DNA of 46,740 nucleotides from Octopus bimaculoides (lineage: Eukaryota): positions 199,135,409-199,182,148 of the forward strand of contig NC_068981.1 of the NCBI RefSeq assembly GCF_001194135.2, given 5' to 3'. Every line of letters starts with the position of its first letter. Position 1 is the stretch's first letter. The notes under the pieces are model-generated. The model saw only the letters and a list, made by a program, of their open reading frames with translations. It had not been told where the DNA came from and ran no database searches. Below, piece after piece: positions 2,685 through 37,726 of this stretch. A program made the translations under genes and the position numbers.

Positions 2685-4100
2685 CATCATCATCATTGTT
2701 TAACGTCCGTTTTCCATGCTGGCATGGGTTGGACAGTTTGACTGAGGTCTGGAGAGCCAGAATGCTTCACCAGGCTCCAATCTGATCTGGCAGTGTTTCT
2801 ACAACTGGGTGCCCTTCCTAATGCCAACCACTCCGAGAGTGTAGTGGGTGCTTTTTTACGTGCCACCGGCACAGGAACCAGTCAGGGGGTACTGGCTTTG
2901 GTCATGTCTGCATAGTGCTTTTTACATGCCACCAGCATGGGAGTCAGTTGGGGTACTGGCATCGGCCATGTTCGGATGGTGCTTTTGATGTGCCACTGGC
3001 ATGGGAGCCAGTCAGGGGACACTGGCATTGACCACGTTCAGATGATGCATTTTATATCGCACCGGAATGGCAGCCAGTCAGGGAGCACTGGCCACAGCTG
3101 TGATTTTGGTTTTACTTGACTCAACAGGTCTTCTCAAGCATATCATATCATCCAACACATCAAGGCTACTCTTAAATGGGTCGGACATGCAACACTGGCA
3201 TCGGCCATGGCTGTAATCTCACTTGGCTTGCTGGGTTTTCTCAATCACAACATATTTCCAAAGGTCCCGGTCTCCTGTCATTGCCTCTGTGAGGCCCAAT
3301 GTTTGAGGGTCATGCTTCACCATTTCATCCCAAGTCTTCCTGGGTCTACTTCTTCCACAGGATCCTTCCACAGGATCCTTCCACAGTTAGGGGTGGCAAT
3401 TCCTTACACAGCTCTCCTCATCCATACGCAACACATGACCATACCAGCGCAGTCGTCTCTCTCTTGCACACCACATATGATGCTTCTTATGCCCAACTCT
3501 CCCCTCAGGGTGTTTATACTCTGTCATGTATGCACACTGACATTACACATCCAGCGAATCCTACTAGCTTCATTTCTTTCAACCCTACGCATCTCCTCAG
3601 CAGTCACGTTGCATGTTTCACTGCCATGTAGCATGGCAGTTTGCACACATGTATCACACAGTCTACCTTTCACCCTGAGCAGCAGAAATAGGAGCTCCCT
3701 GAACTTTGCCCACACTACTCTTATTCTAGCAGCTACACTCTCAGAGCCACCACCCAAACTACTGACTTGGTTGCCTAGATTGCAGAAGCTATTAACTACT
3801 TCTAGTTTCTCCCCCTGGCATGTGATGGAATCTGTTTTCTGTACATCTTCAGTGTTTATGGCCCCTGTGCATCTGCTATACACAAAAACTATCTTCCCAG
3901 TTAACCTTCCTTTGATGTTGCTGCGCCTTTTATGTGTCCATAGCTTACACTGGGTACATCATAAGGAGTTTCTACCGATGCCTTTTCTACAGATCAAGGG
4001 GTTTGTGATCTGTCAGCCTTCCCACTTAATAAGACTTTGGTTCTTGCTAGATTAACCCTAAGGCCCTTTGATTCTAGACCTTTGCTGCCTGCAGCCTACA
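2685..4100 (-). mobile_element. 5'-truncated RTE-clade LINE (RT C-terminal region + 3' UTR + (GAT)n tail), degenerate
   Basis: ORF 3524-3883 (-) reads ...LEVVNSFCNLGNQVSSLGGGSESVAARIRVVWAKFRELL...AMLHGSETC..., typical of the post-RT region of RTE LINEs. The 3' end aacccatgccagcatggaaaacggacgttaaacaatgatgatg is shared by many copies in the window. Confidence 0.88.
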
Positions 4101-4107
4101 GTACCAT

Positions 4108-4205
4108 ACTATCTGTTCTTTTCAACTAATACTTTCCTGATAATTCTGGCCGTGCCAAGGAGGCAAACCTTTTGTAGCAGTTCGACTGGGCACACTATTC
4201 TGAAT
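4108..4205 (-). mobile_element. Small R4/Dong-like non-LTR fragment (extreme C-terminus)
   Basis: Minus strand reads IVCPVELLQKVCLLGTARIIRKVL, similar to 5050-5130. Confidence 0.7.
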
Positions 4206-4211
4206 TATTAT

Positions 4212-4335
4212 TGCCTTTCATCCTTTCAGGGTTGATAAATTAAGTACCAGTTGAACTCGGGGGGAGGGGGATTGATGTAATCGATACATACCCCTGCCCC
4301 CCAAATGGCTGCCCTTGTAACAAAATTTGAAATCA
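4212..4335 (+). mobile_element. 3' half of a SINE (same family as 19048-19270) with (ATT)n tail
   Basis: gcctttcatcctttcagggttgataaattaagtaccagttg...gctgcccttgtaacaaaatttgaaatcattatt aligns to 19149-19270. Confidence 0.8.
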
Positions 4336-4372
4336 TTATTATTATTATTATTATTGTTATTATTATTATTAC

Positions 4373-4932
4373 TGAGTGAGAGAGCAGAACACATCATCAA
4401 AATGATGCTGGAGTGCAAATATACGAAGCCCATTATACCCATCATGACTACATGTTTGATAAGGGTACTCCAGGTACATACATCACAACCATACATGTGT
4501 AATGTGGTGATCTCATTTTAAGATAAACAGTGCATGACCTTGCAGGTAGGGTCCAGTTAGCATTTTCATCTGGTCAAGAAGCCCATCCCGCTCAAAAGGT
4601 CCCTGAATAAGGTTTGTTTAAGGATGTTGAGCAAAACACCCATGTTTCCAGAGGTGAATTATTCAAACCCCAAAGAATTCCTCTCAACACTTGGCTATGA
4701 TGCTCCCCCACTACTTCTGCTCATCATCAGAGATGCACATATCATCAGCCACCAAGGGACATGCTCAACTGGTTAAGGTCAAACAACTGACAAGAAGCAA
4801 ATCTGTGGTATTGAGCAGAATATTTGCTGTAGCCCATCTTTTATACCAAGACAAAACAATGTACATGATGACACTTCCAATCAATTAAGATCAGAAGCCA
4901 TGAGAGCCACTGCCTGGCACTGCATCCAGGCA
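4373..4932. repeat. About 560-bp apparently non-coding element flanked on both sides by (ATT)n
   Basis: Sharp boundaries at the (ATT)n tract 4333-4372 and at ttattattatcatcatc (4933). No recognisable protein homology in any frame. Confidence 0.5.
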
Positions 4933-4957
4933 TTTATTATTATCATCATCATCATTT

Positions 4958-5416
4958 TTTTTTATCTCAGGTTTTGTTAGAACTCCTGGAGTCTTGCATG
5001 CATAGTGGGCTTGCTGCCTGCTGCTTAAGATACCATGATATCCATTCCTTTCAGTGATCTAATACTTTCCTGATTATTCTGGCCGTGCCAAGGAGGCAAA
5101 CCTTTTTGTAACAGTTCTACTGGGCACTCTATTCCGATTTCCTTTATATTCCTCTTGATGCCTTCTGATACTGTCCCCAAGGACCCATCAATAATTGACA
5201 TTATCTTCACCTTCTTCATTTTCCATAGTCAGGCTATTTCATACTTAAGAGGGTTGTATCTATTTATCTTTTCGCCTTCCTTCTTGACTATTCGTGAATC
5301 AAAGTGGCACACAACATCAACTATATAGATCATGTGGTGCATCTTGTTGACCACCACTAGGTTCGGTCTGTTATGCTCTAGTACCTGATCTGTTTGGATT
5401 GGGAAACCCCAGAGGA
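4958..5416 (-). mobile_element. R4/Dong-like non-LTR retrotransposon 3' fragment (restriction-like endonuclease domain)
   Basis: Minus strand: LWGFPIQTDQVLEHNRPNLVVVNK...IVDV...KYEIA*LWKMKKVKIMSII.GSLGTV...ELLQK..LLGTARIIRKVL. This is the RPD-type REL motif plus the conserved C-terminus. Confidence 0.85.
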
Positions 5417-5434
5417 TTATTATTATTATTATTT

Positions 5435-5922
5435 TGGTTTGTCTCAGGTTCAGTCTTATTCCTGCTAGGGATTATGTGGATAACAGATTACTACTTATAA
5501 CCACAAGTTTTCAGTAGTCCTTCACGTGTTTAGAACCCTCCTGATAATCCTTGCTGTCTTCCCTAAGAGACAAACTTTTTGTAGGAGGTCTACCAGGCAT
5601 TCTATTTCAAATCTCCTTCAGCCATTTGTCTATATCTTTGCTCACAGTTCCCAATGCACCGATTATTACAAGCACAACCTTTACAGTTTTCATACTCCAA
5701 ATTCTTCCTATTTCAAATTTTAGGAGATTGTATTTTCTTTGTTTTTCTTTCTCTTTCTATATCAATCCTCTAATCAAATAGGCATGATGGGTCAATAAGT
5801 AAGCAACTTTGCTTTTCCTAATCATTATTTCTAGTCTATTATTTTCCAATTTCTGTTTGAATAGGAAAGTCTCACAAAATCTTACAGTTCTCCAATTCCA
5901 GTACTCTTTCAACTCAATGATT
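5435..5922 (-). mobile_element. R4/Dong-like fragment (REL C-terminus + 3' UTR), frameshifted; runs into an N-gap
   Basis: Minus strand ...KYNLLKFEIGRIWSMKTVKVVLVIIGALGTVSKDIDKWLKEI...; its 3' end abuts (ATT)n at 5417-5434. Confidence 0.8.
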
Positions 5923-6199
5923 NNNNNNNNNNNNNNNNNNNNNNNNNNNNNNNNNNNNNNNNNNNNNNNNNNNNNNNNNNNNNNNNNNNNNNNNNNNNNN
6001 NNNNNNNNNNNNNNNNNNNNNNNNNNNNNNNNNNNNNNNNNNNNNNNNNNNNNNNNNNNNNNNNNNNNNNNNNNNNNNNNNNNNNNNNNNNNNNNNNNNN
6101 NNNNNNNNNNNNNNNNNNNNNNNNNNNNNNNNNNNNNNNNNNNNNNNNNNNNNNNNNNNNNNNNNNNNNNNNNNNNNNNNNNNNNNNNNNNNNNNNNNN

Positions 6200-6444
6200 T
6201 GGCACAAAAAAGACACCATTTCGAGCGTGGCCGTTGCCAGTATCGCCTGACTGGCCTTCGTGTGGGTGACACGTAAAAGCACCTACTACACTCTCTGAGT
6301 GGTTGGCGTTAGGAAGGGCATCCAGCTGTAGAAACTCTGCCAAATTAGATTGGAGCCTGGTGTTGCCTTCCGGTTTCACCAGTCCTCAGTCAAATCGTCC
6401 AACCCATGCTAGCATGGAAAGCGGACGTTAAACGATGATGATGA
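6200..6444 (+). mobile_element. Young RTE LINE 3' end with (GAT)n tail
   Basis: Nearly identical to the reverse complement of 40720-40935; ends ggacgttaaacgatgatgatga. Confidence 0.85.
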
Positions 6445-7155
6445 AATCCCCGTTTCTGGCACAGTTTCCAGCGTAAAACCTTATAACTTGGTCGTGCTTC
6501 CATTTCTTATATTCTTCCTGTACCATCTTTGGGCACTTTGCCATAGTGTGTGCCACTGTCTCATTCCAAGTTCCACAGACTCTACATTTTTCTGACACAT
6601 TCTCTCCATATATTTTCTCCTGTTTATACCGCTTGATCTTGGGCTGCTACAATTAAGCTCTGTTTCTTTTTTTAATTGCCCCTTTCTTAACCAAGCCCAG
6701 AATTTTCTTCCACTTACATCTTCAGTAGCTTTCCAAAAACTGGCCATGCACAGGGTTCTCTTTGATCTGTCTGACGTGCTCTCTTTCTATTTAATTTTTG
6801 TCCTTTTCTCTTATTATGCGCTTCATCACCTGTTCTCTCTTAACTGTTTTCAGTAGTTTTTCTCTGCTGCACTGAAAATACTCTACTCGACTTTGTCGTT
6901 CTGTCTGTACACATTCTTCTATTTCTTTTAAACCTCTTCCACCCTAGTCTCTCCTCAAGTACAGCCAGTTGATATCTGCTTTCAGATGGTGGGCACCGTA
7001 CATTGTCAATGACTTCCTGGTTTTTCTGTCAAGTTTCTTTATATTGTTTCTGGTCCAGTCTATAATTCCAACTCTGTATCTGATTAAGGCTACAGCTCTT
7101 GAATTTATTGGACTTAGCTGTAACAACAATACTTTTCTGACTCTCCTTGTGTCAG
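6445..7155 (-). mobile_element. R4/Dong-like fragment (thumb to CCHC zinc-knuckle region); probably the upstream part of 5435-5922 interrupted by the RTE copy
   Basis: Minus strand ...INSRAVALIRYRVGIIDWT...KLDRKTRKSLTMYGAHHLKADINWLYLRRD... and ...HGQFWKATEDV..FWAWLRKGQLKKETE..IVAAQDQA. Confidence 0.82.
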
Positions 7156-7199
7156 AAAAGTATTATTATTATTATTATTATTTTGTTGTTATATAAAAA

Positions 7200-8045
7200 C
7201 TCAGTTTATTTTGCTGGGTATAATGGAAAGTGTCATCTGTCCACAGCCAGCAGACTAAGGTGACCCTTGTTTACTGGTCATGCTTAAAAAACCCTGCAAA
7301 TAATAGAAGTTCCAAGCAATGTTGATTTTTGTAAGTGTTCACCCTTCACACTTGCACCAATCTTTTCCAGCCATGTTGGTAGTTGAATGCTGATACTTCC
7401 AACTGCACCAATTACTATTGCTATCACGTCTACGCTCTTCTTTGGCCACAACCTTCGTATTTCCCACTTCAAATCGTCATAGTTGTTTATTTCTTCTTCT
7501 TCTTTCACATTGATCCTGTTGTCACTGGGGCATGCTATGTCGATTATCATACACGTTCTTTCTTTTTTATTCACCACAACAATGTCCGGTTTCCGATGTC
7601 TGGTTAGGTGACCACACTGGGTGATCACACAAGATTTTGCAATTCTCATTCTCGGTGACTCCTCCTGGAGTTTTTTCATACCACATCTTTGCTCTTTGTA
7701 GGCCGTGATTTGCACAGAGCTCCCAATGGATCATTCTTACCACATTGTCATGGCACCATTTGTATTTGTGTTGTGCCAGTGTCGGGAATTTGATAACAAT
7801 GTGCCATATCATTTCACCCCTCTCACCACAGATTCTGCATTTGCTGCTATTGGTAGTGTTGTCTATTCTGCACTTCACATAGTTGGCCCTGAATGTTAGT
7901 TCTTGAGCTGCGCATATGAATGCTTCTGTCTCTACCTTCAGGTCAGTCCTCCTCATCCATAGCCACCGGTCCTCTCTGTCTGTCCTGCCATTCACATCTC
8001 TCGCAAACTGACCATACATTTTCTTTTCTTTCCATGTTTTTTTCT
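7200..8045 (-). mobile_element. R4/Dong-like non-LTR fragment (CCHC knuckle + REL endonuclease)
   Basis: ORFs 7567-8019 and 7284-7715: MYGQF...LKVETEAFICAAQE...CRICGERGEMIWHIV...HDNVVRMIHWELC...RKPDIVVVNKKERTCMIIDIACP...LQKSTLLGT. Bounded by (TAT)n at both ends. Confidence 0.92.
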
Positions 8046-8114
8046 TTCATTATTATTATTATTATTATTAGTAGTAGTAGTAGTAGTAGTATCTTTATTA
8101 TTATTATTATATTT

Positions 8115-9000
8115 TAATTCTCAAACCTCTGGGTCTTACTCTGATTCTGTGAAAGCAGACAGTAACCTGTTGTCATCAGAGGTGTCACGGTGTCCCTTTC
8201 CACAAATTATAAGCTTTGGTACTTGGATGGCACCTTATCATAGAAGGCACCCGACACCCCATCACCAGTCTCAAAATCCTAGCCGTCCCCAAGAGAGCAG
8301 GTTTTTTAGGCCTGCTCTGCCCTCATGTCAATTCCAGTTTCTCTGACATATTCCTCAAACCTGGTTGTTAGTGCTCCAAGGGTCCCTAAAACTACTGCGA
8401 TAACAGTTACTCTCCTCATTGACCACATTTCTTGTCATTTCGTCTTTTAGTACTTTGTATTTCTCCATCTTTTCCAGCTCTTTGTCCCCTACGCATGCAT
8501 CCTCAGGAATGGCAATATCTGTTACCTTGATTTCCTTATTTCTTTTATATATCACAAGGTCAGGTCTCCAAGCATCGATTAGGGAGTCACATTGGATTGT
8601 AAAATCTCACAGGGTCTTATACTCATTGTTCTCAGTGACGCCCTCTGGTCCACGTTTGTACCATTTCCATGCGCTGCCCAGACCATACTTTTCACACAGT
8701 CTCCAGTGGACAAACTTAGCCACATTATTCTGCCTCCTTTTTCTAGTGCTTTTGGCTCAGCTTGCTACACTCACTCACTCACATGTGAGATTGTTTCATT
8801 CCTGCTGCCACACATCCTACGAAGGACTGATTCACTGCTCTTATCTATTTAGAACTTGGTGTAATTAGTTCTCAGAGCTTCTTCCTGGACACTCAGTGCA
8901 TCCTTTCACATCAATTTTTCTTAGCCATCTCTACGTGTGTTGGTATTTCTCTGAGGTATTGCCCATGCATTGTTTTCATTTTTCAGTTGTTTAATCTGTG
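8115..9000 (-). mobile_element. R4/Dong-like non-LTR fragment, degenerate
   Basis: Minus strand ...NNVAKFVHWRLCEKYGL...WYK..PEGVTENNEYK..DFTIQCD..IDAWRPDLVIYKRNKEIKVTDIAIP... Confidence 0.85.
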
Positions 9001-9069
9001 TTCTCCATCTTGTTTCTTAAAATTTTTCCAAACACATCACATTTGCATTAGGTATTATATTGTTAATTC

Positions 9070-9985
9070 TAACAGCAGCATGCAAGGATTCACTCTGCTG
9101 TTTGATGTACCATCCCAAACTATTCTTCTCATTGAAAACACAGATCTTGCATCTTATGAGGCCTCTTCCTCCCTTGGGTATGTGCTGTGGTTTGCTGTGG
9201 TGCTCTTATGTTTACTGTATTGAAAGTGTTTTGCGTAGAATGTGTGCAGTACCCAGTAGTGCAATTTTCTGTATGTTATATATATTTGTAAGTCCTGGTG
9301 TTTTTGTTATGTATTTGTCTGAATATTTTATTATTATACCTAAGGCACCTACTATGATAGGAATTGTTTCTGTTTTTAGATTCCACATTCGAGTTACCTC
9401 TATTTCCAGGTCTTTGTATTTTGAAAGTTTCTCCATTTCTTTTAGGGAAACGTCATCTGCTGGTATTGATACATCAATTAGAAAGCATTTTTTTCCTTCA
9501 TGATCTTNNNNNNNNNNNNNNNNNNNNNNNNNNNNNNNNNNNNNNNNNNNNNNNNNNNNNNNNNNNNNNNNNNNNNNNNNNNNNNNNNNNNNNNNNNNNN
9601 NNNNNNNNNNNNNNNNNNNNNNNNNNNNNNNNNNNNNNNNNNNNNNNNNNNNNNNNNNNNNNNNNNNNNNNNNNNNNNNNNNNNNNNNNNNNNNNNNNNN
9701 NNNNNNNNNNNNNNNNNNNNNGTATATAGGTCCCAGCTCTGTCGTGTCTGTGAATATATTCCTTCTTAGCCAGGACTGGGCAGCCAGAGATAATATGATT
9801 TATTGTTTCTTGTCCATCGCCACATATTCTGCAGTTACTTGTTATGTTTCTTTTCATTATATGTTTTTGGTAATTTCTGGTGAGGAGGCTTTGGTCTTGT
9901 GCAGCAATTAAAAATCCTTCAGTCTCTGCTTTAAGTCCTGAGCTTCTCAACCATTGCTGGGGTTTTGCTTTGTCTCTTTCTTGTT
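9070..9985 (-). mobile_element. R4/Dong-like non-LTR fragment, well preserved, spans an N-gap
   Basis: ORF 9498-9950 LKAETEGFLIAAQDQSLLTRNYQK...CRICGDGQETINHIISGCPVLAKKEYIHRHD and ORF 9212-9436 KYKDLEIEVTRMW...IPIIVGALG...QKIALLGTAHILRKTL. Confidence 0.93.
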
Positions 9986-9998
9986 ACTATTATTAGTA

Positions 9999-10031
<33 letters not shown>

Positions 10032-10249
10032 CATCATCATCATCATCATCATCATTATTATTATTATTACTAATCTGTTATAGTGTTGGTACTATAATAG
10101 CAAAAATCAGGTTTTAAATTTATCTTAGCAACTTTTGGCTGTGGAGCTGTAAAAAAACATACATATTTGACTATCGAGAAGTGGTGGAGTGGGATATGGC
10201 CTCGTCCCATGTGCAGAGTTTCAAGTCATCCAGGAAGGGGTCACACTCA

Positions 10250-10430
10250 ACAACTGGTGTAGCAGCATTATTATCAACAGCCACAAAGGTGAATGAGAAG
10301 CCTTGAACAAAAATAAATATGGACATATCAAAGTAGTAGACCAGGTCATGAAAGGTGGAGAAAGGGTCATAGGTCAAGTAATTAGAGAGACCTGGATGAA
10401 GTGGTGAAGAATGTTCTAAAAAAAGCTGAA
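10250..10430 (+). mobile_element. Old RTE reverse-transcriptase fragment
   Basis: Reads KGEALNKNKYGHIKVVDQVMKGGERVIGQVIRE, a degraded version of KGD.LDRNNYRGIK.LDQVMKV.ERVIAQLIRE seen at 37560-37680 (-). Confidence 0.55.
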
Positions 10431-10636
10431 CTTCACAGGGGAGATGGCAAAGGACTGAGACAAATGGCAATTTGCTAAAATTTTAGCTGCATAAATGGTG
10501 TGATTGCCAATAGTCAGAACAATAACTTGTGTGTCTAACAGAGATTCAAAGTAAACTTCCAAAATACATCTCAGTAAATAATGCTATTGTCCTCCATCTG
10601 GTGAACAACCAAGGAGAAAAAAGCATATGCAGGAGC

Positions 10637-10897
10637 CATCATCATCATCATCATTTAACATCTGTTGTCCATGATGGCATGGGTTGGACGGTTTGACTGG
10701 GCTGACAAGCTGCAAGGCTGCACCAGACTCCAGTCTAATTTGCCATGGTTTCTACGGCTGGATGCCCTTCCTATCGCCAACCACTCTGAGAGTGCAATGG
10801 GTGCTTTTACGTGCCACCCACATGGGTGCTATTTTGCCTGACACCAGTATCTGCCACAACTGCAATTTTGCTCAGCTTGATGGGTCTTCACCACCCT
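10637..10897 (-). mobile_element. RTE LINE 3' end
   Basis: (CAT)n followed by ttaacatctgttgtccatgatggcatgggttggacggtttgactg..., the shared RTE tail. Confidence 0.8.
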
Positions 10898-10993
10898 GAA
10901 GAAATCAGCCAAAGAAGAATGATTTGTAAAAGTACAAAATCACGGTGGTGCTCCTGCATGACTTCAGCTGCATGGCTGAAATGAATAAAAGAG

Positions 10994-11071
<78 letters not shown>

Positions 11072-12189
11072 TTAACGTCCGCTGATGATGATGATGATGA
11101 ATATATATGAATCATTCCTTTCTAAACTTTTATTTCTTTCAAAATGAAACTAGTTATTATTTCAGGAGATTTATTTCGTTAAAAGGAAAACATGTAATTT
11201 TCTTGCCATGACCTAAATGTTTTTACAATATTTTAGCTTGTTTTAACGAATGTTAATGCTCCTAATTACCATGTTCATTAACTTTCCCACTCCTTTGCAT
11301 AAACATCTCTGTCCCTCTCTCTCTCTTTCATTATAAGATCTCTTTTAACTAAATTCTTTTCTTATCATCCATAATGAGTTCCTGACTGAATTCTTCATCA
11401 ATGATTGTTTCCAACATCACCTGCTTTTCCTACCCAGATAAGGTCCCCCAGACCAAAGTGCTGTGAAAAGCTTTATTAAACTAGCTTAATCCCCTTAAAC
11501 CTTTTCGATACCAACCCCCATGCTAGCTTCATAAGAACCTTCCTGTTTTAAAGGGATCTCAATTAAAACCTTCTTCCATCGAAATTCCAGATTAATTCAC
11601 GTTCTAAACCTTTGATAACAACAAATTTATTTTCTTGAATTATTCATTAATTTCATAATTAGTCGAAGTGAAAACAGTGTATTTCAACAGAAATATTTTG
11701 GGTGCAAAAGGGCTAAACTTGATTTTTGTTTCATTTGCTCTGCTGGTAGGGACTTAGCGTCCATGACCCTTAAAGGCTCTCAATGAGAATGATGGGGTTT
11801 AGGTTTACATTTCTCTTGATTAGTTGGAAGTTGCAAGACAGCAATATAAACCTGTTCTCATACAGCACTAGACTTCTCAGTCAACCTATACAGTAGTGGT
11901 AGTAGTAGTAGTATAGGATGTAACAGAAAGGGTTTGTTGTGAAATGTTTTGTTACATTAGTGGCAGACAAAGCCAGTTTTATATATTAGGTTGGTGAACA
12001 AAGACAACTATACACACACACACACACATGTATATGTATAACAGGCTTCCACACAGTTTCCATCTACCATGTTCACTCCCAAAGCATTGGCTAGTGCAGG
12101 GCTATGGGGTTACAAGGTAAGCTTCTTCCTACAGCTGTGCCTGCACTCACACACACACACACACACACACACACAGATAGATAGGGAAT

Positions 12190-12958
12190 TGTATCCCGTC
12201 CCTTCTGCTGGTTACATTCCCCCCCTCTCTCCCTACCTCTCATCCCTGGAACCATTTCCATCCCTTTCCCTGCACTATTTCCAACAATTACCCCCTTTCT
12301 GTGCTTTCACTCTTCTCTCTCTCTCTCCCTCCCCCCCTCCATTCTCACCTGCTTTCATTTTCAATTTCCTTTCATATCTATCTTCATGCCCCATGATCTA
12401 TCTCTATGTCTTCCTGTCTCCATGGCCTCTACTCCTTGCACGTCATCCCACTGCTTTCTGATCTATTCCCCTTCCTGAGCCACTATAATCTCTTACCTCA
12501 TTTCCCTTCAAACGCACCTCTACCCTTGTTCATCACCCTACTCGTCCCTTACCCCCTCTTTCTTATTCCTTCAGCATTTATTCTAGCACCTCATCACTCT
12601 CTTCCGGTCATCTCCTCCATAGCAAGACACCTGTGCTTGTCCTTCTCCCATACTTTAGCCTATCAACCCCTGGCACATCGTCACCCATCTCTTCCTCCTC
12701 GTCTCACAGACTTCCCTCTTGGTATTTGGAGCTTCTTCTTTGTCCCTGTTCTTTTTCTGTCTTGTCAGTTTATGTAGCAACCTCACTTGCGCCAATGGCA
12801 GGGGGGGGGGGGAATCACCCTGTACACTCTGTAAAGTGGTTGGTATTTGGAAGGGTATCCAGTCATAGAAACCATACCAATGCTGACACTGGAGCTTGAC
12901 ACATTTATGCAGCTCAACCCAAGTCAGCTGGGAAAAAGATGTTGAATGATGATGAAAT
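12190..12958 (+). mobile_element. Pyrimidine-rich element ending in a diverged RTE-type 3' tail
   Basis: About 600 bp of C/T-rich body, then gtggttggtatttggaagggtatccag...gatgttgaatgatgatga. Same architecture as 33750-34480. Confidence 0.55.
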
Positions 12959-13102
12959 AGAGATTTTACTTCAGTCTAGTCAGTCTCTTGCTACTCTGAG
13001 TTTTGCTTGTGAGTTTGCCCAACCCATGCCAGCATGGAAAGCGGATGTTCGATGATGATGATGATGATGATGAGTTCACAAGATTTTCAAACAAGTTCTA
13101 AC

Positions 13103-13148
13103 TTGCCTGAAGATCCTGTGTACCCACTAGCGAAACTTAGAGTAGCAA
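13103..13148 (+). ncRNA. Degenerate type I hammerhead ribozyme motif (Penelope-type)
   Basis: TTGC-CTGAAGA-T-CCTGTG tacc CACTAGC-GAAA-CT tag AG-TA-GCAA: stem I TTGC/GCAA, GUA cleavage triplet. The G10.1:C11.1 pair is lost and stem II is bulged. Confidence 0.6.
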
Positions 13149-13223
13149 AAAACTAACTTGGCAAATAAAGCATATCATTAATCTCTACTATGGTATTCAG
13201 AAGCCTTTTATTTCTGACAGTTA

Positions 13224-13283
<60 letters not shown>

Positions 13284-14289
13284 CATATACATATATACAC
13301 AACGTAGATTGGATTAAAATCCAAGTTGTGTCCTCTTGAAGCACGTCTGCTTATTTCAGTATTTCAAATCTGTTTGTAGATGTTATATTTGTGTGAAATA
13401 TTCATAAGAGTTGAAAACTCTGGGAAATATTTTTTGCAGAGTAACGTGTTTCATTTGCTAACAGGAGATGCAAAACTGTATGTATTAGATAAACATTAGA
13501 AATTCTTCTCAGAGAGTATCAAACACTACATAATATTTGATTCTCAGTCTGAAGAATTTCTAATCGGAGATATCTTGCATGTCTTCTATTATCTGTACAG
13601 TTTTGTAATTCCTACTAGCAAATGAAACATGTGTAATGGTGAATAAATACCAAACAATGCTCCAATCTCCTGTTTTTTACACACACGTATGTATGTATGT
13701 ATGTATGTATGTGTGTGTGTGTATATATATGAGCGAGAGAGAGAGATGAGCAGGGAAACATTTTTGGTTAACGATGAGAGTAGTGTTTAGAATGTAATGT
13801 TGCAGGAAATAGTGAGGATTAGCTGTGAAGTCTACCATGTTTTAGTTAGCATCTCCCTTCATTTTCAGTTGGGTCCATGATACAGATGCAACCAGTAGAT
13901 ACTTACTTTAATGATTTTCTTTGTAAGATAACACAGTTTTCTAAAAGCTCTGTGAATGTAAAATAAAATCATAAACATTGCTAAATAGGTTTGTTCCCCT
14001 GCTCCCCCCCCCACTCAATCACACATACACAATTACCAAATTGTAGAATTGTGAACATTTCTATATTTTAATAGACTATGTTAGATATCTAAGGAAAGCG
14101 ACACAGTTTATGTTAAGTGGTTTTTGAAAATGGAAAAAAAAAAAAAACATTAGAGTGGTGTATGGCTCTCAGAAGTAAGACGCTTTTACTGAAATGAAAG
14201 TTTTATTTCATTTCTGCCATCATAAAATATTAAATGACTGCAAAGTGTTTCCTGCTGCACCACCTGTGTTTAGCAGTGAAGTATTCCTC

Positions 14290-14657
14290 TTGGCTTCACT
14301 TAGTACTTGATATGGTAGGCTCTTATATAACTGGCACTCCATCAGTTGTGTCAACTAATGTTCCAGTTGATCCAACCAACGGAACAGCCAGTTCATGAAA
14401 TTCACATGCAAGTGGCTGAGTACTCCGTAGGCATGTGTGCCCTAAATGTAGTTCTCAGGGAGATTCAGTGTGACACAGAATGTATCAAGGCTGGCCCTTT
14501 GAATTATAGGTACAATTCGTGTTTTCCAACTGAATGAACTAGAGCAACGTGAAAGTAAAGTGTTTTGCTCAAGGACACAAGGCATCAGCAGGAATTGAAC
14601 TCACAACTTTACGATTGTGAGCTGACAACCCTGACCACTTAGCCTCATGCTTTTCAC
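14290..14657 (-). mobile_element. tRNA-derived SINE (family distinct from the other two)
   Basis: Minus-strand head gcatgaggctaagtggtcagg (A-box-like) ... gagttcaattcc (B box), followed by gtgtccttgagcaaaacactt. Confidence 0.75.
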
Positions 14658-15359
14658 TCTCGGTTGACAGCTTCACCAGGTTCCATTGTTTGTTCTGGTC
14701 ATACTTTCTATGACTGGATGCCCTTGTATAATGCATAGCATCTCCATCAACTGACACTATCCATATAATTATTAGATGAATACGTCATCTAAGGGGGCCT
14801 CAAAGAGGCCACAAACAGGAAAGATTACTTCAATAAAATCAGTTAATCCAAAATTTCGAACAAATTAGACAATGTGGATAGGAGATGGCAAGGTCTTTAA
14901 GACCAACTGGTTAATGTAATGAATATGTTTGTATAGTGAAATATCTTCAGAACACGGAATGGTTTTGAGATGGTATCCACCTAAGACGAAGGGTAATCAG
15001 TGTTGTGTGTGTGTAGTGAGAGATTTGCTGTGATTTTCAGCAACACAGCTAGAAACGTATTCAGAGGAGTTTCCTGCTTGATAAATATAAGCTCAGTAGG
15101 AGTTAACTCCCATGTTGTGTTTACATTTTCGATATCAAAAGGGAGTTTTTGTATACTAATAACTTACATAGTTTAACTCAAATGAAATTTCTCATTCTTT
15201 GTATTATGCACGTGCGACAGTATTTCACAGAAAGAAACCAACCCTGAAGCATTTTTAGTCACCCTTTATTGAAATTTATAACAAGTCTCACTATTTCTCC
15301 ACCCACCCTTCTCCCTCTCTCTCTCCCCCACTTCCCAATCACATAATGTAGTTTTAAGA

Positions 15360-15530
15360 CCCTACTGCAGGGCATCTTGGGCAAGTGTCTTCTACTGTAG
15401 CCTCAGGCTCATCAAAGCCTTGTCAGTGAATTTGGCAGACAGTCTGAAAAGCCCATATATATAGCTTTTCCTTTTATGTGTTTCAGTCAGAGACTGAGGC
15501 CATGCTGGTGCACCACCTTTACTGCATCCA
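15360..15530. mobile_element. Degraded SINE pieces (family of 44658-45096)
   Basis: catcttgggcaagtgtcttctactgtagcctcaggc...aaagccttg and gtttcagtcag..ggccatgctgg.gcaccacctt match the intact copy. Confidence 0.6.
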
Positions 15531-15723
15531 GGGATTTTTCCAGTATTGCTTCTGGTTTATGAAACTAGTTCTGTATTAACCACAGTAACTTTAAAATAAA
15601 CTTCATCTCACCCACATTCTACAATCATTTCATATCAAGGAGAATTGCCAATGTTTTATTTAAACATTAATCATTCAACACACATGGAAGATAAGTCTTT
15701 TAACTGCTCTTCTCCCTCTCTCT

Positions 15724-15950
15724 ATCATCATCATCATTGTTTAACGTCAGCTTTCCATGCTGGCATGGGTTGGACGGTTTGACTGAGGATTGGCAATCCA
15801 GAAGGCTGTACCAGGCTCCACTGTGATCTGACAAGGTTTCTACAGCTGGATGCCTTTCCTAATGCCAACCACTCAGAGAGTGTAGTGGGTGCTTTTATGT
15901 GCCACTGGCACAAGGGCCAGTTGGGTGGTACTGGCATCAACCACACTTAT
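15724..15950 (-). mobile_element. RTE LINE 3' end
   Basis: (CAT)n tgtttaacgtcagctttccatgctggcatgggttggacgg... shared tail. Confidence 0.82.
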
Positions 15951-16192
15951 TCTACACACGTATATATCTTTCTGAAGAATTTTCTAATATTGATTTCCTG
16001 ATATTAATAACAATATATTGTATAATATATATAATCGCTCATATTAAATGTATAAATACTTTAATAGTATTAATACTTTGATACAAAAGAGCACTCACTG
16101 TAAATTCAGTATACAATATCCTCATTGAATATATTTAACTAAAGATTTATATATCTATGTGTGTGTATATATATATGTATATATATATTATT

Positions 16193-16223
<31 letters not shown>

Positions 16224-16412
16224 TTATATTATCTTAGTTGGAAAACTTTGATAAGGTAAATATGTTAATAGTTACCAGGGTAGCAAAATTCACAAAGAAG
16301 CTGGGATATTATACCTGGTTGAGAGGTAGAAATTCCATGTTAAAGTGATGTATTTTGAGTTGATATAATAAAGAATAAATGGAGTAAAATGCATATAATA
16401 AATAAATTCCTT

Positions 16413-16504
16413 TAATTCCGACACATGTTTCGAAAATTACATGCCCTCTATTCCAAAGGAATAAAAGATGTTATTATACATGTAATTTTCTCTTCCGGGA
16501 ACCA
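16413..16504 (-). ncRNA. Hammerhead motif, antisense arm, core-mutated (CGGAAGA instead of CTGAAGA)
   Basis: Reverse complement of the left arm gives the same fold as 16627-16718 but with U4->G in the core. Confidence 0.7.
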
Positions 16505-16626
16505 TTCTTTAAATGCAAGACTTGTACCGAATGTCAAAATTACATATTTGGAAGATCACTGTATAGCTAAGTTTAAAAAGACTGTTAGATGAAGAAACAT
16601 TTGGTACAAGTCTTGCATTTAACGAA

Positions 16627-16718
16627 TGGTTCCCTGAAGAGAAAATTACATGTATAATAACATCTTTTATTCTTTTGGAATAGAGTGCATGTAATTTTCG
16701 AAACATGTGTCGGAATTA
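16627..16718 (+). ncRNA. Type I hammerhead ribozyme with intact catalytic core
   Basis: Stem I TGGTTCC(16627-33)/GGAATTA(16712-18, two G:U pairs); core CTGAAGA 16634-40; perfect 12-bp stem II GAAAATTACATG/CATGTAATTTTC; GAAA 16700-03; stem III ACA-tg-TGT; GUC cleavage triplet ending at C16711. Confidence 0.85.
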
Positions 16719-17014
16719 AAGGAACTTATTTATTATATGCGTTTTACTCCATTTATTCTTTATTATTATTATATATATATATATATNNNNNNNNNNNNNN
16801 NNNNNNNNNNNNNNNNNNNNNNNNNNNNNNNNNNNNNNNNNNNNNNNNNNNNNNNNNNNNNNNNNNNNNNNNNNNNNNNNNNNNNNNNNNNNNNNNNNNN
16901 NNNNNNNNNNNNNNNNNNNNNNNNNNNNNNNNNNNNNNNNNNNNNNNNNNNNNNNNNNNNNNNNNNNNNNNNNNNNNNNNNNNNNNNNNNNNNNNNNNNN
17001 NNNNNNNNNNNNNN

Positions 17015-17709
17015 TGTGTAATGTCAGTGTGCATGTACGAAAGAGTGTAAGCACCCTGAGAGAAAAGTTGGACTTAAGAAGCATCAAATGTGGTGTGCAA
17101 GAGAGACGACTGCGCTGGTAAGGGCATGTGTTGCATATGGATGAGGACAGCTGTGTGAAGAAGTGTCACATCCTAGCAGTAGAGGGAAGCTGTGGAACAG
17201 GTAGACCCAGGATGGGCTGGTGAAGCACAACCTTCGAACTTTGGACCTCACAGAGGCAATGACAAGTGACCGAGACCTTTGGAGATATGCCATGCTTGAG
17301 AAGACGTGGCAAGCCAAGTGAGACCATAACCGTGGCCTATGCCAGTGTAGCATAACTGGCCCATTTAGTGATTGGCAATATACTATGCTTGAGAATACCT
17401 GGTGAGTCAAGTAAAATCATTGTTGTGGCCGATGCCAGTGCCAACTAACTGATCCCGTGCTGGTGGCACGTAAAAAGTACCATTTGAGCATTGTTGTTGC
17501 CAGAACCGCCTGACTGGCGCTCATGCTGATGACACATAAAAGTACCCACTACACTCTCAGAGTGGTTGGCATTAGTAAGGGCATCCAGCTGTAGAAACAT
17601 TGCCAGATCAGATTGGAGTCTGGTGCAGCCTCCTGGCTTCTTAAACCCCAGTCAAACCGTCCAACCCATGCCAGCATGGAAAGTGGACGTTAAACGACGA
17701 TGATGATGA
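17015..17709 (+). mobile_element. RTE LINE 3' fragment
   Basis: CNVSVHVRKSVSTLREKLDLRSIKCGVQERRLRW*GHVLHMDEDSCVKKC... followed by the 3' UTR and ttaaacgacgatgatgatga. Confidence 0.88.
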
Positions 17710-17946
17710 CGGTACATTTGTATGCACTTATGTATACATTTATATACATATATATACATACATATATACATACGTATGTTAAATTCAAATTACGACAAAT
17801 GTAAACAAACAAACGAAGTTTGCTTTTAGAAGCGTTGAGATGTCTTAGAAAGTTAAAGAAGTGATTTTAAATTCTCAATCGCAGAAGTCCACAGCTAGCC
17901 ACCTACACTTTTCTCTGAAAAATAGGGGTAGTTTATCCTGTTCAGG

Positions 17947-17988
<42 letters not shown>

Positions 17989-19047
17989 CTCACACACACA
18001 CACACATATACATGCACACACGCATGTGTACATATGTGTTTGTGTTTGTTTTCCTTGAGTTTACTGGTTTGTAAGCCAATGACATTCCTTTGCAGTCCTC
18101 CATTAAAGGATATCCAAGCTTTCTGACATGTTGTAACATGTTGCACAATCTGTTAACAAAAGGCTGCTTAAACAGTGCTTTTCGTACCCAATTCACACCT
18201 AAAGCATGTCTGCGCTGTTCAGAAGAATTGGAGCTTATTATGTTTGTTGGTTCACTACCATTCCCTCTGTTGTTCAAACTCATTCTGTTAGTATTGTCTC
18301 ACTCTGATTGTTTTTAGTTTTTAAACATCTCTAGACGTAGTTTTCACTACTAAATGGTTAGATAATGTCAATTCATTGGAGATTTTTCAGTTTACTCCAC
18401 ATGCGAGAGCCTACAATATTTCAAAGAACTTGTGCTTTGGTGTACTTTTTTTTTCACTTGAGGTGGATTCCATCTCAAAACCATTCTGTAGAACTTAAAA
18501 GAAATGTCTTTAAAATTGTCATAGTACAATGTCTTTAAATAATCTCATTGCCAACTGTGAAAGAGCAAATAATGTGATACCATTTGGAATCTGTTTTCAG
18601 TTTGGCAATCAAATTATCAAAATTCTGTAGAATAACTGAAAGAGAAGCGAAGACATATTAGCTTACCATTTTAGCCAATTGTTTTTGTTTTTTTTTTTTG
18701 CTTCTTTCTGTTTTGCTCATAAATGTCATCATACTAAACTGATCTTTTGTGTTTTTATTTCTGATATGTTTAACACACAAAGTAGTTGTTGCATATTTTA
18801 TGTTTTGTACTTTATCATTTGTAAATACAGATTTCTTGCTGACACAGAATAATCATATTTGATCATCAACAAAGTGATTAACGTGCACCAGCTGTAGCTG
18901 CTTTTAATTAGATTATCAGACAACCTCTAACTTAGATTTCACTCACACAACTCGCAGTTAGATTCACATCAGTAAGATAATATGGAAGCTTCAACCGTTG
19001 GACTGTGGCAACACTGGGGCATCAACATGAATTATTATTATTATAAC

Positions 19048-19270
19048 TTTGGCAGTGAGCTGACAGAACCATCTGCATGCTTGACAAAATGCTTAGCAGT
19101 ATTTCGTCTATTTCTACATTCTGAGTTCAAATTCTGCCAAGGTCGACTTTGCCTTTCATCCTTTTGGGGTCGATAAATTAAGTACCAGTTGAATGCTGGG
19201 GTCAATGTAATCGACCCAGCCCCTCCCCCAAAATAGCTGCCCTTGTTGCAAAATTTGAAACCATTATTAT
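19048..19270 (+). mobile_element. Near full-length SINE inserted in (TTA)n
   Basis: ggcagtgagctgacagaacc head, gagttcaaattc B-box-like motif, central gcctttcatccttttggggtcgataaattaagtacca, (ATT)n tail; (TTA)n also immediately upstream. Confidence 0.8.
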
Positions 19271-19548
19271 TATAATAACAAAGGTAATAAACCACTGAGG
19301 AGAGATCTCACAGAACCAACAATTGAATTTATCTCCAATTACAAGCTTCCATCTTGAAACAAAATGCAACGTTTTGAATAATACATTGTCCGAAAAACAT
19401 TAGGGGAGGTTATGGTTGAAATGCCTTTGATCATGTGTTCAGTCAGGCTTGACCTGGGCCAAAACTATGATATAGCATCTGAATCCATTGCAAATAATGA
19501 TTTCTGTTGTATATTTATCCCCTTTTCTAAAATTTTATTTCTGCGCAG

Positions 19549-20356: not shown

Positions 20357-20444
20357 AATATCCCATCCGTGCGGGATTGATGCTAGATGGGTTGAAACAA
20401 TTGTAGTGATTAATAAACATTTTCATATCTTCCANNNNNNNNNN

Positions 20445-20507
<63 letters not shown>

Positions 20508-21575
20508 TGAACTCACACAATGATATAAATATCTGTGAGGGCCTTATGTGTTAGTATATATCAACTCTTACTCAGATAAGAGTTCATATACACTAACAGC
20601 AGAGTTCCTACAAAGAACACAAAGTTGTCGTATTTGGTAAAGAAAGTCAGCCATATTTGTTTCATTAACAACAGCCACATTGTATGAAATATTTTCATAT
20701 AATCATTGAAACATTGCTGGTAGGCTGATGCTGCTGCCAAAATACACTTCTGTAAACTTCATCCAACATTCACTGTCAAATTTCTCAATCAAATCGTTCT
20801 AATTATATTTAAAATTGAATTTTTTCATTAAAAATCTAATTTTTGTTTATCCATGTCCTTCTCCCCATACAGCTGTGATAATATTATTATATTATTATTA
20901 CTATTATTAATCAGGTCGCAGCCGTGAATCGAACTTGGAATCTTGGGGTTAGTAGCCTGCGCTCTTAACCACTACGCCATATGCCCGTGGGCAATTATGG
21001 AGTGAATTTTAGGGCTTATAAATCTATTATTTTTCTATCCTTCCTCAATACCGGTTCCCATATGCTATTCTTATCTGCACTCGGTCTGCTTAGGAGGTTG
21101 TTGTGTCCTAGCATATGTGCTGTTGCTTTTAGTTTTCGTATTTTCCAGTGCTGTTCCCTGTCTATTATTTTAACTTCATCCCACAGGGGGAGGTGGTCTC
21201 CATTTTGCCATACATGATCAGCTATACCCGATTTATCAATATCTCCTCGTGTCNNNNNNNNNNNNNNNNNNNNNNNNNNNNNNNNNNNNNNNNNNNNNNN
21301 NNNNNNNNNNNNNNNNNNNNNNNNNNNNNNNNNNNNNNNNNNNNNNNNNNNNNNNNNNNNNNNNNNNNNNNNNNNNNNNNNNNNNNNNNNNNNNNNNNNN
21401 NNNGGAGATATTTGTGAAGTGTTGTATTGCTCTTGAATACTGCCCTAATGTCATATGGGCCGCATATCTTTTGTATCTTTTCGGAGAGGCCTTTCACATA
21501 GGGTAGACAGACTGTAGACAGTTTATTGGTTTCATCCTCTCTTTTCTTCATAATTGGAGTGGATAGTATGTTCTT

Positions 21576-22170
21576 CGAAAAAATGATCAAGCTCAGTAAC
21601 AATCTATTAAGAAACAACTACCCCAAGAACATACTATCCACTCCAATTATGAAGAAAAGAGAGGATGAAACCAATAAACTGTCTACAGTCTGTCTACCCT
21701 ATGTGAAAGGCCTCTCCGAAAAGATACAAAAGATATGCGGCCCATATGACATTAGGGCAGTATTCAAGAGCAATACAACACTTCACAAATATCTCCTTCG
21801 GGTAAAAGCACCAACAGAAGAGAATTTGACCAAAAACTGCGTGTACTCCATCCCATGCAGCTGTGGCAGGTTATACAAAGGCGAAACATCCCGCCCCCTC
21901 AAAATAAGGGTAGAAGAACATCGCAAAGCTGTGACACGAGGAGATATTGATAAATCGGGTATAGCTGATCATGTATGGCAAAATGGAGACCACCTCCCCC
22001 TGTGGGATGAAGTTAAAATAATAGACAGGGAACAACACTGGAAAATACGAAAACTAAAAGAAGCAGCACATATGCTAGGACACAACAACCTCCTAAGCAG
22101 ACCGAGTGCAGATATGAATAGCATATGGGAACCGGTATTGAGGAAGGATAGAAAAATAATAGATTTATAA
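21576..22170 (+). CDS. Penelope-like retroelement ORF, C-terminal part (RT thumb end + GIY-YIG endonuclease), 5'-truncated
   Basis: Uninterrupted frame: LLRNNYP...VCLPYVKGLSEKIQKI...VFKSNTTL..YL...KNCVYSIPCSCGRLYKGETSRPLKIRVEEHRKAV...SGIADHVWQNGDH..LWDEVKIIDREQHWKIRKLKEAAHM...MNSIWEPVL. The apparent start at 21526 lies inside the inverted arm and is not genuine. Confidence 0.9.
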
Positions 22171-22199
22171 GCCCTAAAATTCACTCCATAATTGCCCAC

Positions 22200-22272
22200 G
22201 GGCATATGGTGTAGTGGTTAAGAACGAGGGCTACTAACCCCAAGATTCCGAGTTCGATTCACGGCAGCGACC
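22200..22272 (+). promoter_or_regulatory. tRNA-like module (Pol III A and B boxes) inside the Penelope-like 3' region; inverted copy at 20914-20986
   Basis: gggcata-TGGTGTAGTGG(A box)-ttaagaacgagggctactaaccccaagattcc-GAGTTCGATTC(B box). The aagattcc.rgttcga segment resembles tRNA-Arg. The acceptor stem does not pair. Confidence 0.7.
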
Positions 22273-22371
22273 TGATTAATAATAGTAATAATAATATAAT
22301 AGTAATAATAGTAATAATAATATAATAGTAATAATAATATAATAATAATAGTAACATCGAAATTTCCCCAA

Positions 22372-22417
22372 GACACCTGACGAAGGCTGGAGGGTATATC
22401 AACCGAAACGTTGTGTT
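22372..22417 (+). ncRNA. Minimal type I hammerhead ribozyme of Penelope pseudo-LTR type
   Basis: GACAC-CTGACGA-A-GGCTG gagggtatat CAACC-GAAA-CG-TT-GTGTT: stem I GACAC/GTGTT, palindromic ACGT stem III, GUU cleavage site, one C:A mismatch in stem II. Confidence 0.8.
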
Positions 22418-22459
22418 AACAACAAACAAGATGAGGACAAATATCCGTCAAATGTAAAT

Positions 22460-22650
22460 AATGTAAGGGGTTAGTTGGTTTCATCAACCGCAATGCTCTC
22501 AACCTGCTTTTATTGACTCTGAAAAGAAGAAAGGCAAAGACGACTTTGGTAGAATTTGAACTCAGAATGTAAAGATGGACAAAATGTGTCTAAGCATTTG
22601 GTCCAGTGTACTAATGATTGTGCCAGTTTGCTACCTTGGTTTCAAATTTT
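22460..22650 (-). mobile_element. Degraded SINE (family of 19048-19270)
   Basis: aaaggcaaagacgactttggtagaatttgaactcagaatgt...ctaagcattt is the reverse complement of the SINE head/core. Confidence 0.6.
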
Positions 22651-37705: not shown

Positions 37706-37726
37706 CACCTGTCATTGGGTGTCATT

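What the first reader, a model, noticed from the sequence alone, without database searches (positions are those of the whole stretch)
16627..16718. Intact hammerhead ribozyme on the sense strand of an MCU intron
Seen: all conserved core nucleotides are present (CUGAAGA, GAAA, GUC), with a perfect 12-bp stem II, a 7-bp stem I and a short stem III whose ACAUGU is palindromic. Established: Penelope-like elements carry type I hammerheads with short palindromic stem III that often cleave as dimers. Inference: it lies in the 17.8-kb MCU intron in the transcribed orientation, so it could cut the MCU pre-mRNA at C16711 co-transcriptionally unless suppressed, and so could affect splicing order or output of an essential mitochondrial channel.
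Basis: partly seen in the sequence, partly recalled or inferred. Interest (0 to 1): 0.85.

Follow-up and report, generated by a model that had tools for sequence, protein, structure and literature searches.

The report
Transposon-derived hammerhead motif inside a palindrome
A sequence with every conserved hammerhead-ribozyme nucleotide does sit in an intron of the calcium-uniporter gene, but it looks like one half of an inverted-duplicate retrotransposon relic that should pair with its mirror copy instead of cutting the transcript, so it is ordinary.

Summary
At 16627-16718(+) there is a type I hammerhead motif with a complete consensus core, a 7-bp helix I, a 12-bp (15 with G-U) helix II and a 2-bp helix III in the palindrome ACAUGU. 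It lies in sense orientation in a 17,779-nt MCU intron. It is the only descriptor hit in the window. None of 400 random windows gave a hit of this quality. Rfam Hammerhead_1 aligns end to end, but at 18.4 bits against a gathering score of 34.

The motif is in the right arm of a 402-bp inverted repeat (arms 16365-16534 and 16597-16766, 96% complementary). The left arm holds a mirror copy on the other strand with a core mutation (U4 to G). A Penelope-like element 5 kb downstream has the same head-to-head palindromic shape.

I read it as a relic of a hammerhead-bearing Penelope-type retroelement, but I found no other copy of it. Cleavage of MCU pre-mRNA is unlikely. Helix III is too weak for a monomer, there is no same-sense partner, helix II is too long for the usual loop contacts, and the upstream arm sequesters the motif by about 110 kcal/mol. 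This is a new member of a known kind, of low interest.

The parts
16627..16718 (+). Type I hammerhead motif with a complete consensus core. Helix I 16627-33/16712-18; CUGAAGA 16634-40; helix II 16641-55/16685-99; GAAA 16700-03; helix III 16703-04/16709-10 with loop AUGU; predicted cleavage 3' of C16711.
   Evidence: Sequence; descriptor scan; Rfam Hammerhead_1 full-length alignment at 18.4 bits, E 0.028; isolated fold gives helices I and II at P 0.98-1.0.
16597..16766 (+). Right arm of the inverted repeat. I read it as a 5'-truncated copy of the parent element in + orientation. The hammerhead ends 48 nt before the arm's outer (3') end.
   Evidence: the repeat finder I1; arm alignment.
16535..16596 (.). 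62-nt centre of the palindrome, only partly self-complementary.
16365..16534 (-). Left arm: a mirror copy on the minus strand with 7 differences in 170 nt. Its hammerhead image is at 16413-16504(-), with the core mutated to CGGAAGA (U4 to G, + strand C16496).
   Evidence: no Hammerhead_1 match at E<=10.
16767..17014 (.). AT-rich (TAT/TA)n flank of 20 nt, then a 228-N assembly gap directly after the right arm.
1770..19548 (+). MCU intron that hosts the element (GT..AG, 17,779 nt including 719 N). It lies between the coiled-coil exon (about 1606-1769) and the WDIMEP pore exon (19549-19752).
20879..22465 (+). Comparator, not part of the element. A Penelope-like element remnant in the next intron with the same head-to-head palindromic shape. 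It has a GIY-YIG endonuclease ORF at 21502-22167 and a min-hammerhead-like motif at 22366-22420, 45 nt before the end of homology.

Best explanation
The motif is a real hammerhead-type sequence. It was inherited from a mobile element of the Penelope-like element (PLE) / non-LTR retrozyme kind. Those elements carry type I hammerheads with a very short, palindromic helix III that act as double hammerheads in multimeric element transcripts.

I read the 402-bp inverted repeat as two 5'-truncated copies joined head to head, with their 3' ends facing outward. This layout is documented for PLEs. It is expected if the element's enzyme cuts and primes reverse transcription on both strands of an AT-rich target.

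In the MCU pre-mRNA the relic is most likely inert as a ribozyme. The antisense arm is made first, so the sense arm zips onto it as a roughly 170-bp RNA duplex. The intron is then spliced out and degraded.

Shown here: the motif, the palindrome, the folding energies, the PLE neighbour and the absence of a same-sense partner. Inferred: the PLE/retrozyme parentage of this particular repeat, since no other copy could be retrieved; the insertion mechanism; and the lack of cleavage.
For: - Complete core, G10.1-C11.1 and palindromic 15.2-16.2 plus loop 3. These match the non-random hallmarks listed in PMC4209133.
- Rfam Hammerhead_1 aligns over the full model. Chance is excluded at the level of this window.
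- Two copies cofold as a double hammerhead with an intermolecular ACAUGU helix III, at -56.8 against 2 x -23.2 kcal/mol.
- The inverted repeat has 170-nt arms at 96% complementarity.
- PMC4209133 reports paired hammerheads 100-700 bp apart on opposite strands.
- PMC8557442 describes an inverted 5'-truncated copy next to PLE insertions, (TA)n targets and resulting short-read assembly problems. Here the arm abuts (TA)n and an N gap.
- PMC11167929 shows a PLE protein that cleaves and extends both DNA strands at AT-rich sites.
- The same window holds a genuine PLE fragment: an endonuclease ORF 78% identical to an Octopus sinensis protein, with relatives carrying RVT_1 and HTH_animal domains. It has the same palindromic architecture, and its own hammerhead-like motif sits 45 nt from its 3' end, against 48 nt here.
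- Sequestration: -257 kcal/mol hairpin and +109 to +116 kcal/mol to force the hammerhead fold.
Against: - No second copy of this repeat was found: not in the window, not in an Octopus sinensis locus, not in two metagenome scans and one viral scan, and not through translated-ORF searches. Repeat-family status and PLE parentage therefore rest on analogy.
- The arm shares no sequence with the neighbouring PLE. That element's hammerhead is of a different subtype, with no loop 3.
- Helix II (15 bp plus a further paired extension) is much longer than the 4-8 bp reported for animal hammerheads. The Rfam score is below gathering.
- Thermodynamic sequestration does not strictly exclude a kinetic window for folding, and no wet data exist.
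- The palindrome lies 20 nt from an assembly gap.
Confidence: 0.65

Rival explanations
1. The hammerhead is catalytically competent in vivo and cleaves the MCU pre-mRNA inside the intron, so it affects splicing or output.
For: All core nucleotides are intact and in sense orientation. Helices I and II are very stable in isolation. Intronic hammerheads conserved in amniotes are known (cited in PMC7229834).
Against: Helix III is only 2 bp, with P about 0.04. There is no same-sense partner for dimerisation. Single motifs of this class were inactive in vitro (PMC4209133). The 15-bp helix II rules out the canonical loop-loop contact (inference). The upstream antisense arm outcompetes the fold by more than 100 kcal/mol. 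Even the right arm alone disfavours helix I, with +8 kcal/mol and P 0.00015. In Anolis, no RNA-seq reads began or ended at the presumptive cleavage site of a PLE hammerhead (PMC11167929).
Confidence: 0.05
2. The 402-bp palindrome is a foldback or MITE-type DNA transposon, or another hairpin-forming repeat. The hammerhead consensus inside it is a coincidence built on a pre-existing 12-bp internal hairpin.
For: Long terminal inverted repeats with a short centre are the classic foldback/MITE shape. Only miRNA-hairpin models score well on the whole structure (MIR7993 at 55.9 bits, below gathering). The Hammerhead_1 score is modest, and my scaling of its E-value to a genome of a few Gb gives on the order of a hundred chance hits at that score. 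No PLE sequence is attached to the repeat.
Against: An existing hairpin would need CUGANGA directly 5' and GAAA directly 3', then A..U-H and a 7-bp helix I in register. By my rough estimate that is below 1e-8 per hairpin. None of 400 random windows gave comparable quality. The palindromic helix III and G10.1-C11.1 were not required by the descriptor yet are present. No clear target-site duplication is visible at the ends.
Confidence: 0.15
3. The inverted duplication is an assembly artefact next to a gap. The genome holds a single hammerhead-bearing fragment, so the sequestering hairpin does not exist.
For: The right arm ends 20 nt before a 228-N gap. The window has seven gaps. PLE-type structures are known to disturb short-read assemblies (PMC8557442).
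Against: The arms differ at 7 of 170 positions, including a core base. An artefactual fold-back of one read set should be identical. The nearby PLE shows the same architecture independently, and the literature describes it as real.
Confidence: 0.1

Closest known systems
Hammerheads of Penelope-like elements with a small palindromic helix III (Drosophila, rotifer and shrimp type; Cervera & de la Pena 2014, PMC4209133)
   Same: Type I topology, full core, G10.1-C11.1, a helix II longer than canonical, and a very short helix III embedded in a palindrome that implies dimeric action. Copies are often solitary, or paired on opposite strands 100-700 bp apart. The motif lies near the 3' end of the insertion unit.
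   Different: No PLE ORF or pLTR is attached here. Helix II is 15 bp with a 29-nt structured loop, against 6-8 bp. [quoted passage not shown] The family consensus is unknown because no other copy was retrieved.
Animal non-LTR retrozymes (Cervera & de la Pena 2020, PMC7229834; bioRxiv 10.64898/2026.07.22.740005)
   Same: Invertebrate-type helix III (2 bp plus tetraloop). The unit size of at least 170 nt is in the retrozyme range. They are thought to be mobilised by PLEs, and many copies are intronic.
   Different: Retrozymes are defined by same-sense tandem repeats that yield circular RNAs. Here there is no tandem array, only an inverted pair. Helix II is not the canonical 4 bp with conserved loops.
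Rfam RF00163 Hammerhead_1
   Same: Aligns over all 45 model positions with every core position matched.
   Different: It scores 18.4 bits against a gathering score of 34. It is missed entirely in a whole-window search because of the 55-nt helix II insertion.
Conserved intronic hammerheads of amniotes (HH9, HH10; de la Pena & Garcia-Robles 2010, as cited in PMC7229834)
   Same: A hammerhead in sense orientation in an intron of a protein-coding gene.
   Different: From my own knowledge, those are ultraconserved, have stable helices and tertiary contacts, and are active as monomers. This one has no demonstrated conservation, a 2-bp helix III and an antisense mirror copy beside it.

Membership tests
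Hammerhead ribozyme, type I (motif level) | Conserved core: C3 U4 G5 A6 N7 G8 A9, G12 A13 A14, A15.1-U16.1, H17 | tested here: met
   CUGAAGA 16634-40, GAAA 16700-03, U16710, C16711.
Hammerhead ribozyme, type I (motif level) | Three helices around the core, with helix I open-ended | tested here: met
   Helix I is 7 bp and helix II 15 bp, with P 0.98 and 0.998 in isolation. Helix III is only 2 bp (P about 0.04) but forms 6 or more bp between two copies.
Hammerhead ribozyme, type I (motif level) | Site-specific self-cleavage 3' of H17 | not testable with these tools
   Needs in vitro transcription or RNA-end mapping.
Rfam RF00163 Hammerhead_1 | Covariance-model score at or above the curated gathering score (34 bits) | tested here: not met
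   18.4 bits, E 0.028 in a 116-nt search. No hit in the whole-window or 491-nt searches.
Canonical metazoan type I hammerhead (Schistosoma, newt and retrozyme type) | Helix I about 6 bp and helix II about 4 bp with conserved interacting loops 1 and 2 (PMC4209133) | tested here: not met
   Helix II is 12 Watson-Crick pairs, or 15 with G-U, with a 29-nt structured loop.
Non-LTR retrozyme | Same-sense tandem repeats of about 170-400 bp, each with a hammerhead | tested here: not met
   One same-sense motif in 46.7 kb. No tandem array in 16000-17100. The only other copy is inverted.
Penelope-like element insertion (pLTR or tail fragment) | Hammerhead in the pLTR near the 3' end of the unit | tested here: inconclusive
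   The hammerhead ends 48 nt before the arm's outer end. The neighbouring bona fide PLE shows 45 nt. No consensus is available to define the true 3' end.
Penelope-like element insertion (pLTR or tail fragment) | Adjacent inverted 5'-truncated copy forming an inverted repeat, with an AT-rich or microsatellite target (PMC8557442) | tested here: met
   Head-to-head arms at 96% complementarity with a (TA)n flank.
Penelope-like element insertion (pLTR or tail fragment) | Sequence homology to a PLE carrying RT and GIY-YIG endonuclease, or to its pLTR | tested here: not met
   No similarity to the PLE fragment in the window or to the O. sinensis PLE locus. Other PLE families of the source genome could not be searched.
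MITE / foldback DNA transposon | Terminal inverted repeats flanked by a target-site duplication, in many copies | tested here: inconclusive
   Inverted repeats are present. No convincing duplication is seen in the AT-rich flanks. Copy number is unknown.

The most novel reading that the evidence does not exclude
The sense hammerhead is occasionally released from the hairpin and cuts the MCU intron. Release could come from helicases, from A-to-I editing of the 170-bp duplex in an editing-rich cephalopod, or from a kinetic folding window. The palindrome would then act as a switchable ribozyme and double-stranded RNA module that tunes pre-mRNA fate of a mitochondrial calcium channel.
Probability: 0.03. 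Interest if true: 0.75.

Novelty: new member of a known kind. Interest (0 to 1): 0.17.

Why it matters
If my reading is right, this matters little for MCU biology. It is one more retroelement-derived hammerhead among the thousands per genome reported in animals.

It has modest value in two ways.
- No paper in the searched library describes hammerhead motifs in octopus genomes. This one has an unusually long helix II, which standard Rfam scanning misses.
- It is a caution that an intact core is not enough to infer activity: flanking sequence, here an antisense twin, decides the fold.

The long intronic double-stranded RNA could be an editing or small-RNA substrate, but that is speculation.

Tried and rejected
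- Rfam at gathering score on the whole window and at E<=10 on 491 nt found no hammerhead. Only the 116-nt search recovered it.
- The MIR7993, mir-580 and mir-3931 matches reflect a generic long hairpin. All are far below gathering, so I rejected them as family membership.
- I searched for other copies and found none. The searches were BLAST within the window, BLAST against four fetched loci including Octopus sinensis, and exact-pattern scans of metagenome contigs (twice) and viral contigs. They also included a protein word-index search of the antisense ORF (nothing) and a full HMMER scan of 1.84 billion representatives. That scan gave one weak hit at E 1.5e-4 and 26% identity, which I did not examine and treated as noise.
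- I tried to compare the orthologous intron. The closest MCU exon matches (87% and 82% identical) come from organisms with a compact MCU gene or short contigs, so no orthologous intron was available.
- Pfam did not recognise the PLE endonuclease ORF. The homologue search did.
- ARAGORN found no tRNA-like genes.
- A retrozyme tandem array was rejected.

Full report
**1. The observation**

- CUGAAGA lies at 16634-16640.
- Helix II is a perfect 12-bp stem, 16641-16652 with 16688-16699. It starts with G10.1-C11.1 and reaches 15 bp with two G-U pairs.
- GAAA lies at 16700-16703.
- Helix III has two pairs (A16703-U16710 and C16704-G16709) capped by AUGU, inside the palindrome ACAUGU.
- C17 is C16711.
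- Helix I is 7 bp, 16627-16633 with 16712-16718, including two G-U pairs.

I wrote an RNAmotif-style descriptor and ran it on both strands. This is the only hit in the 46.7-kb window. Even a looser version adds only one marginal site, at 13103-13148. Among 400 first-order Markov windows, 2.75% gave any relaxed hit. None had helices I and II of at least 6 bp.

Rfam gives a mixed answer.
- The whole window at gathering score gives nothing.
- A 491-nt search at E<=10 gives no hammerhead.
- A 116-nt search makes Hammerhead_1 (RF00163) the best match. It covers all 45 model positions on 16628-16717(+), at 18.4 bits against a gathering score of 34, E 0.028. The model absorbs a 55-nt insertion in helix II.

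The motif is therefore a sequence-complete hammerhead that is atypical for the curated family.

**2. Gene context**

The + strand carries MCU exons. They are identified by Pfam MCU hits at about 1606-1769 and 23512-23805, and by the WDIMEP pore motif at 19549-19752.

The window is from an octopod or a close relative.
- Its interspersed repeats match an Octopus sinensis chromosome locus at 75-88% identity.
- A transposon ORF in the window is 78% identical to an O. sinensis protein.

**3.

The motif sits in the right arm of a 402-bp inverted repeat.
- The arms are 16365-16534 and 16597-16766, 170 nt each and 96% complementary. A 62-nt centre separates them.
- The arms differ at 7 positions. One difference turns the mirror copy's core into CGGAAGA, a U4-to-G change.
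- The mirror copy lies on the minus strand (16413-16504) and gets no Hammerhead_1 match.
- The right arm runs into (TA)n and then a 228-N assembly gap.
- The repeat occurs once in the window. It is not part of any tandem array.

**4. Folding**

In isolation, the 92-nt RNA forms helices I and II with probabilities of 0.98 and 0.998. Helix III reaches only about 0.04.

Two copies cofold into the classical double hammerhead, with intermolecular ACAUGU pairing. The energy is -56.8 kcal/mol against -46.4 for two monomers. This fits a dimer-dependent ribozyme.

In context the picture reverses.
- The whole repeat folds as one hairpin of -257 kcal/mol, z-score -34.
- Enforcing the hammerhead pairs costs +109 kcal/mol for a transcript ending at 16718. 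It costs +116 kcal/mol for the full repeat.
- With the right arm alone, the cost is still +8 kcal/mol, and helix I has probability 0.00015.

The antisense arm is transcribed first, so the competitor is already present when the hammerhead emerges.

**5. What it most likely is**

Three papers describe this kind of object.
- Cervera and de la Pena (PMC4209133) describe metazoan type I hammerheads with a 1-2-bp helix III capped by a small palindromic loop. These act as dimers. They lie in the flanking repeats of Penelope-like elements (PLEs), mostly as scattered single motifs, and sometimes as two motifs 100-700 bp apart on opposite strands. Single motifs showed no detectable cleavage in vitro.
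- Craig et al. (PMC8557442) state that PLE insertions are strongly 5'-truncated. They often carry an inverted 5'-truncated copy directly adjacent, favour microsatellite targets such as (TA)n, and disturb short-read assemblies.
- A purified PLE protein cleaves and extends both strands of AT-rich DNA (PMC11167929). That offers a mechanism for head-to-head pairs.

The window supplies an internal comparator.
- In the next intron there is a PLE remnant. Its C-terminal endonuclease ORF lies at 21502-22167.
- Relatives of that ORF carry RVT_1 and HTH_animal domains, and one is named a GIY-YIG endonuclease.
- The remnant is itself a head-to-head palindrome. Its arms are 20879-21253 with 21933-22307 (97%) and 21404-21575 with 21625-21796 (100%). 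The centre is 49 nt, and an N gap lies inside it.
- Its tail has a min-hammerhead-like motif at 22366-22420 (GACAC-CUGACGA...GAAAC-GUU-GUGUU). The motif is conserved in O. sinensis, and it ends 45 nt before the end of homology. In the studied arm the distance is 48 nt.

By architecture, target, hammerhead subtype and position, the studied repeat fits a PLE-mobilised insertion of a hammerhead-bearing element.

**6. Limits**

I could not retrieve a second copy of this repeat from any source available here. Family status, the consensus sequence and covariation are therefore untested.
- The arm shares no sequence with the neighbouring PLE, whose hammerhead lacks loop 3.
- Helix II is far longer than the 4-8 bp reported for animal hammerheads.
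- The motif fails the defining features of a retrozyme (no same-sense tandem) and of the canonical loop-loop hammerhead.
- A MITE or foldback element with a chance motif remains possible, and so does an assembly artefact. I rate both as less likely. The core is in exact register around the hairpin, the arms differ at 7 sites, and the neighbouring PLE shows the same shape independently.

**7. Function**

It needs a monomer with a 2-bp helix III and no tertiary loop contact to fold and cut while a 96% complementary strand is already available. I put this at about 5%.

The most probable fate is a long intronic RNA duplex that is spliced out with the intron. It might be edited or diced, but that is speculation.

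Hammerhead-bearing repeats in introns are common. About 44% of Xenopus retrozyme copies overlap introns.

**8. Verdict**

The motif is a new member of a known kind, of low interest.

The decisive tests are:
- a genome-wide copy and covariation analysis;
- long-read confirmation of the palindrome;
- in vitro cleavage of monomer, dimer and full-palindrome transcripts;
- RNA-end and editing analysis at 16365-16766.

Noticed in passing
window 20879-22465: A Penelope-like element remnant in the next MCU intron, arranged as a head-to-head palindrome. The arms are 97-100% complementary, the centre is 49 nt, and an N gap lies at 21254-21403. It carries a GIY-YIG endonuclease ORF at 21502-22167(+), 78% identical to Octopus sinensis LOC118763458.
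   Followed up: yes
window 22366-22420; L004 10937-10982: A min-hammerhead-like motif (GACAC CUGAYGA ... GAAAC GUU GUGUU) in the PLE tail, conserved between the window and O. sinensis. Each copy has one helix II mismatch. Rfam finds nothing here.
   Followed up: partly
window 22195-22275: By eye, a tRNA-like stretch (GGTGTAGTGGTTAAGA...GGTTCGATTC-like) follows the PLE ORF's stop codon and precedes a (TAA)n run. ARAGORN calls no tRNA anywhere in the window.
   Followed up: partly
window 6270-6428(+), 40730-40888(-), and about ten further sites (e.g. 2696-2881, 10658-10828, 15737-15946, 35846-36004, 43419-43736): A high-copy interspersed repeat whose translation reads ...APTTLSEWLALGRASSCRN.... 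Two copies give identical 53-aa ORFs. It is probably a young SINE-like family.
   Followed up: no
window 37047-37725(-): Frameshifted reverse-transcriptase fragments (Pfam RVT_1, E about 1e-10 to 1e-11), presumably from a non-LTR retrotransposon (my inference). A related zf-RVT-like fragment lies at 7570-8046(-).
   Followed up: partly
window 16480-16649(-): The centre of the palindrome scores 55.9 bits (E 5e-10) against the plant miRNA family MIR7993, whose gathering score is 100. This reflects a generic long hairpin, not homology.
   Followed up: yes
window 13103-13148(+): A marginal hit to the most relaxed hammerhead descriptor (helix I 4 bp, helix II 3 bp with bulges). It is probably chance.
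   Followed up: no
window 5923-6199, 9508-9721, 16787-17014, 20435-20444, 21254-21403, 26730-27004, 43380-43389: Seven N gaps, two of them inside or next to palindromic retroelement insertions. Intron lengths and repeat boundaries are therefore approximate.
   Followed up: partly
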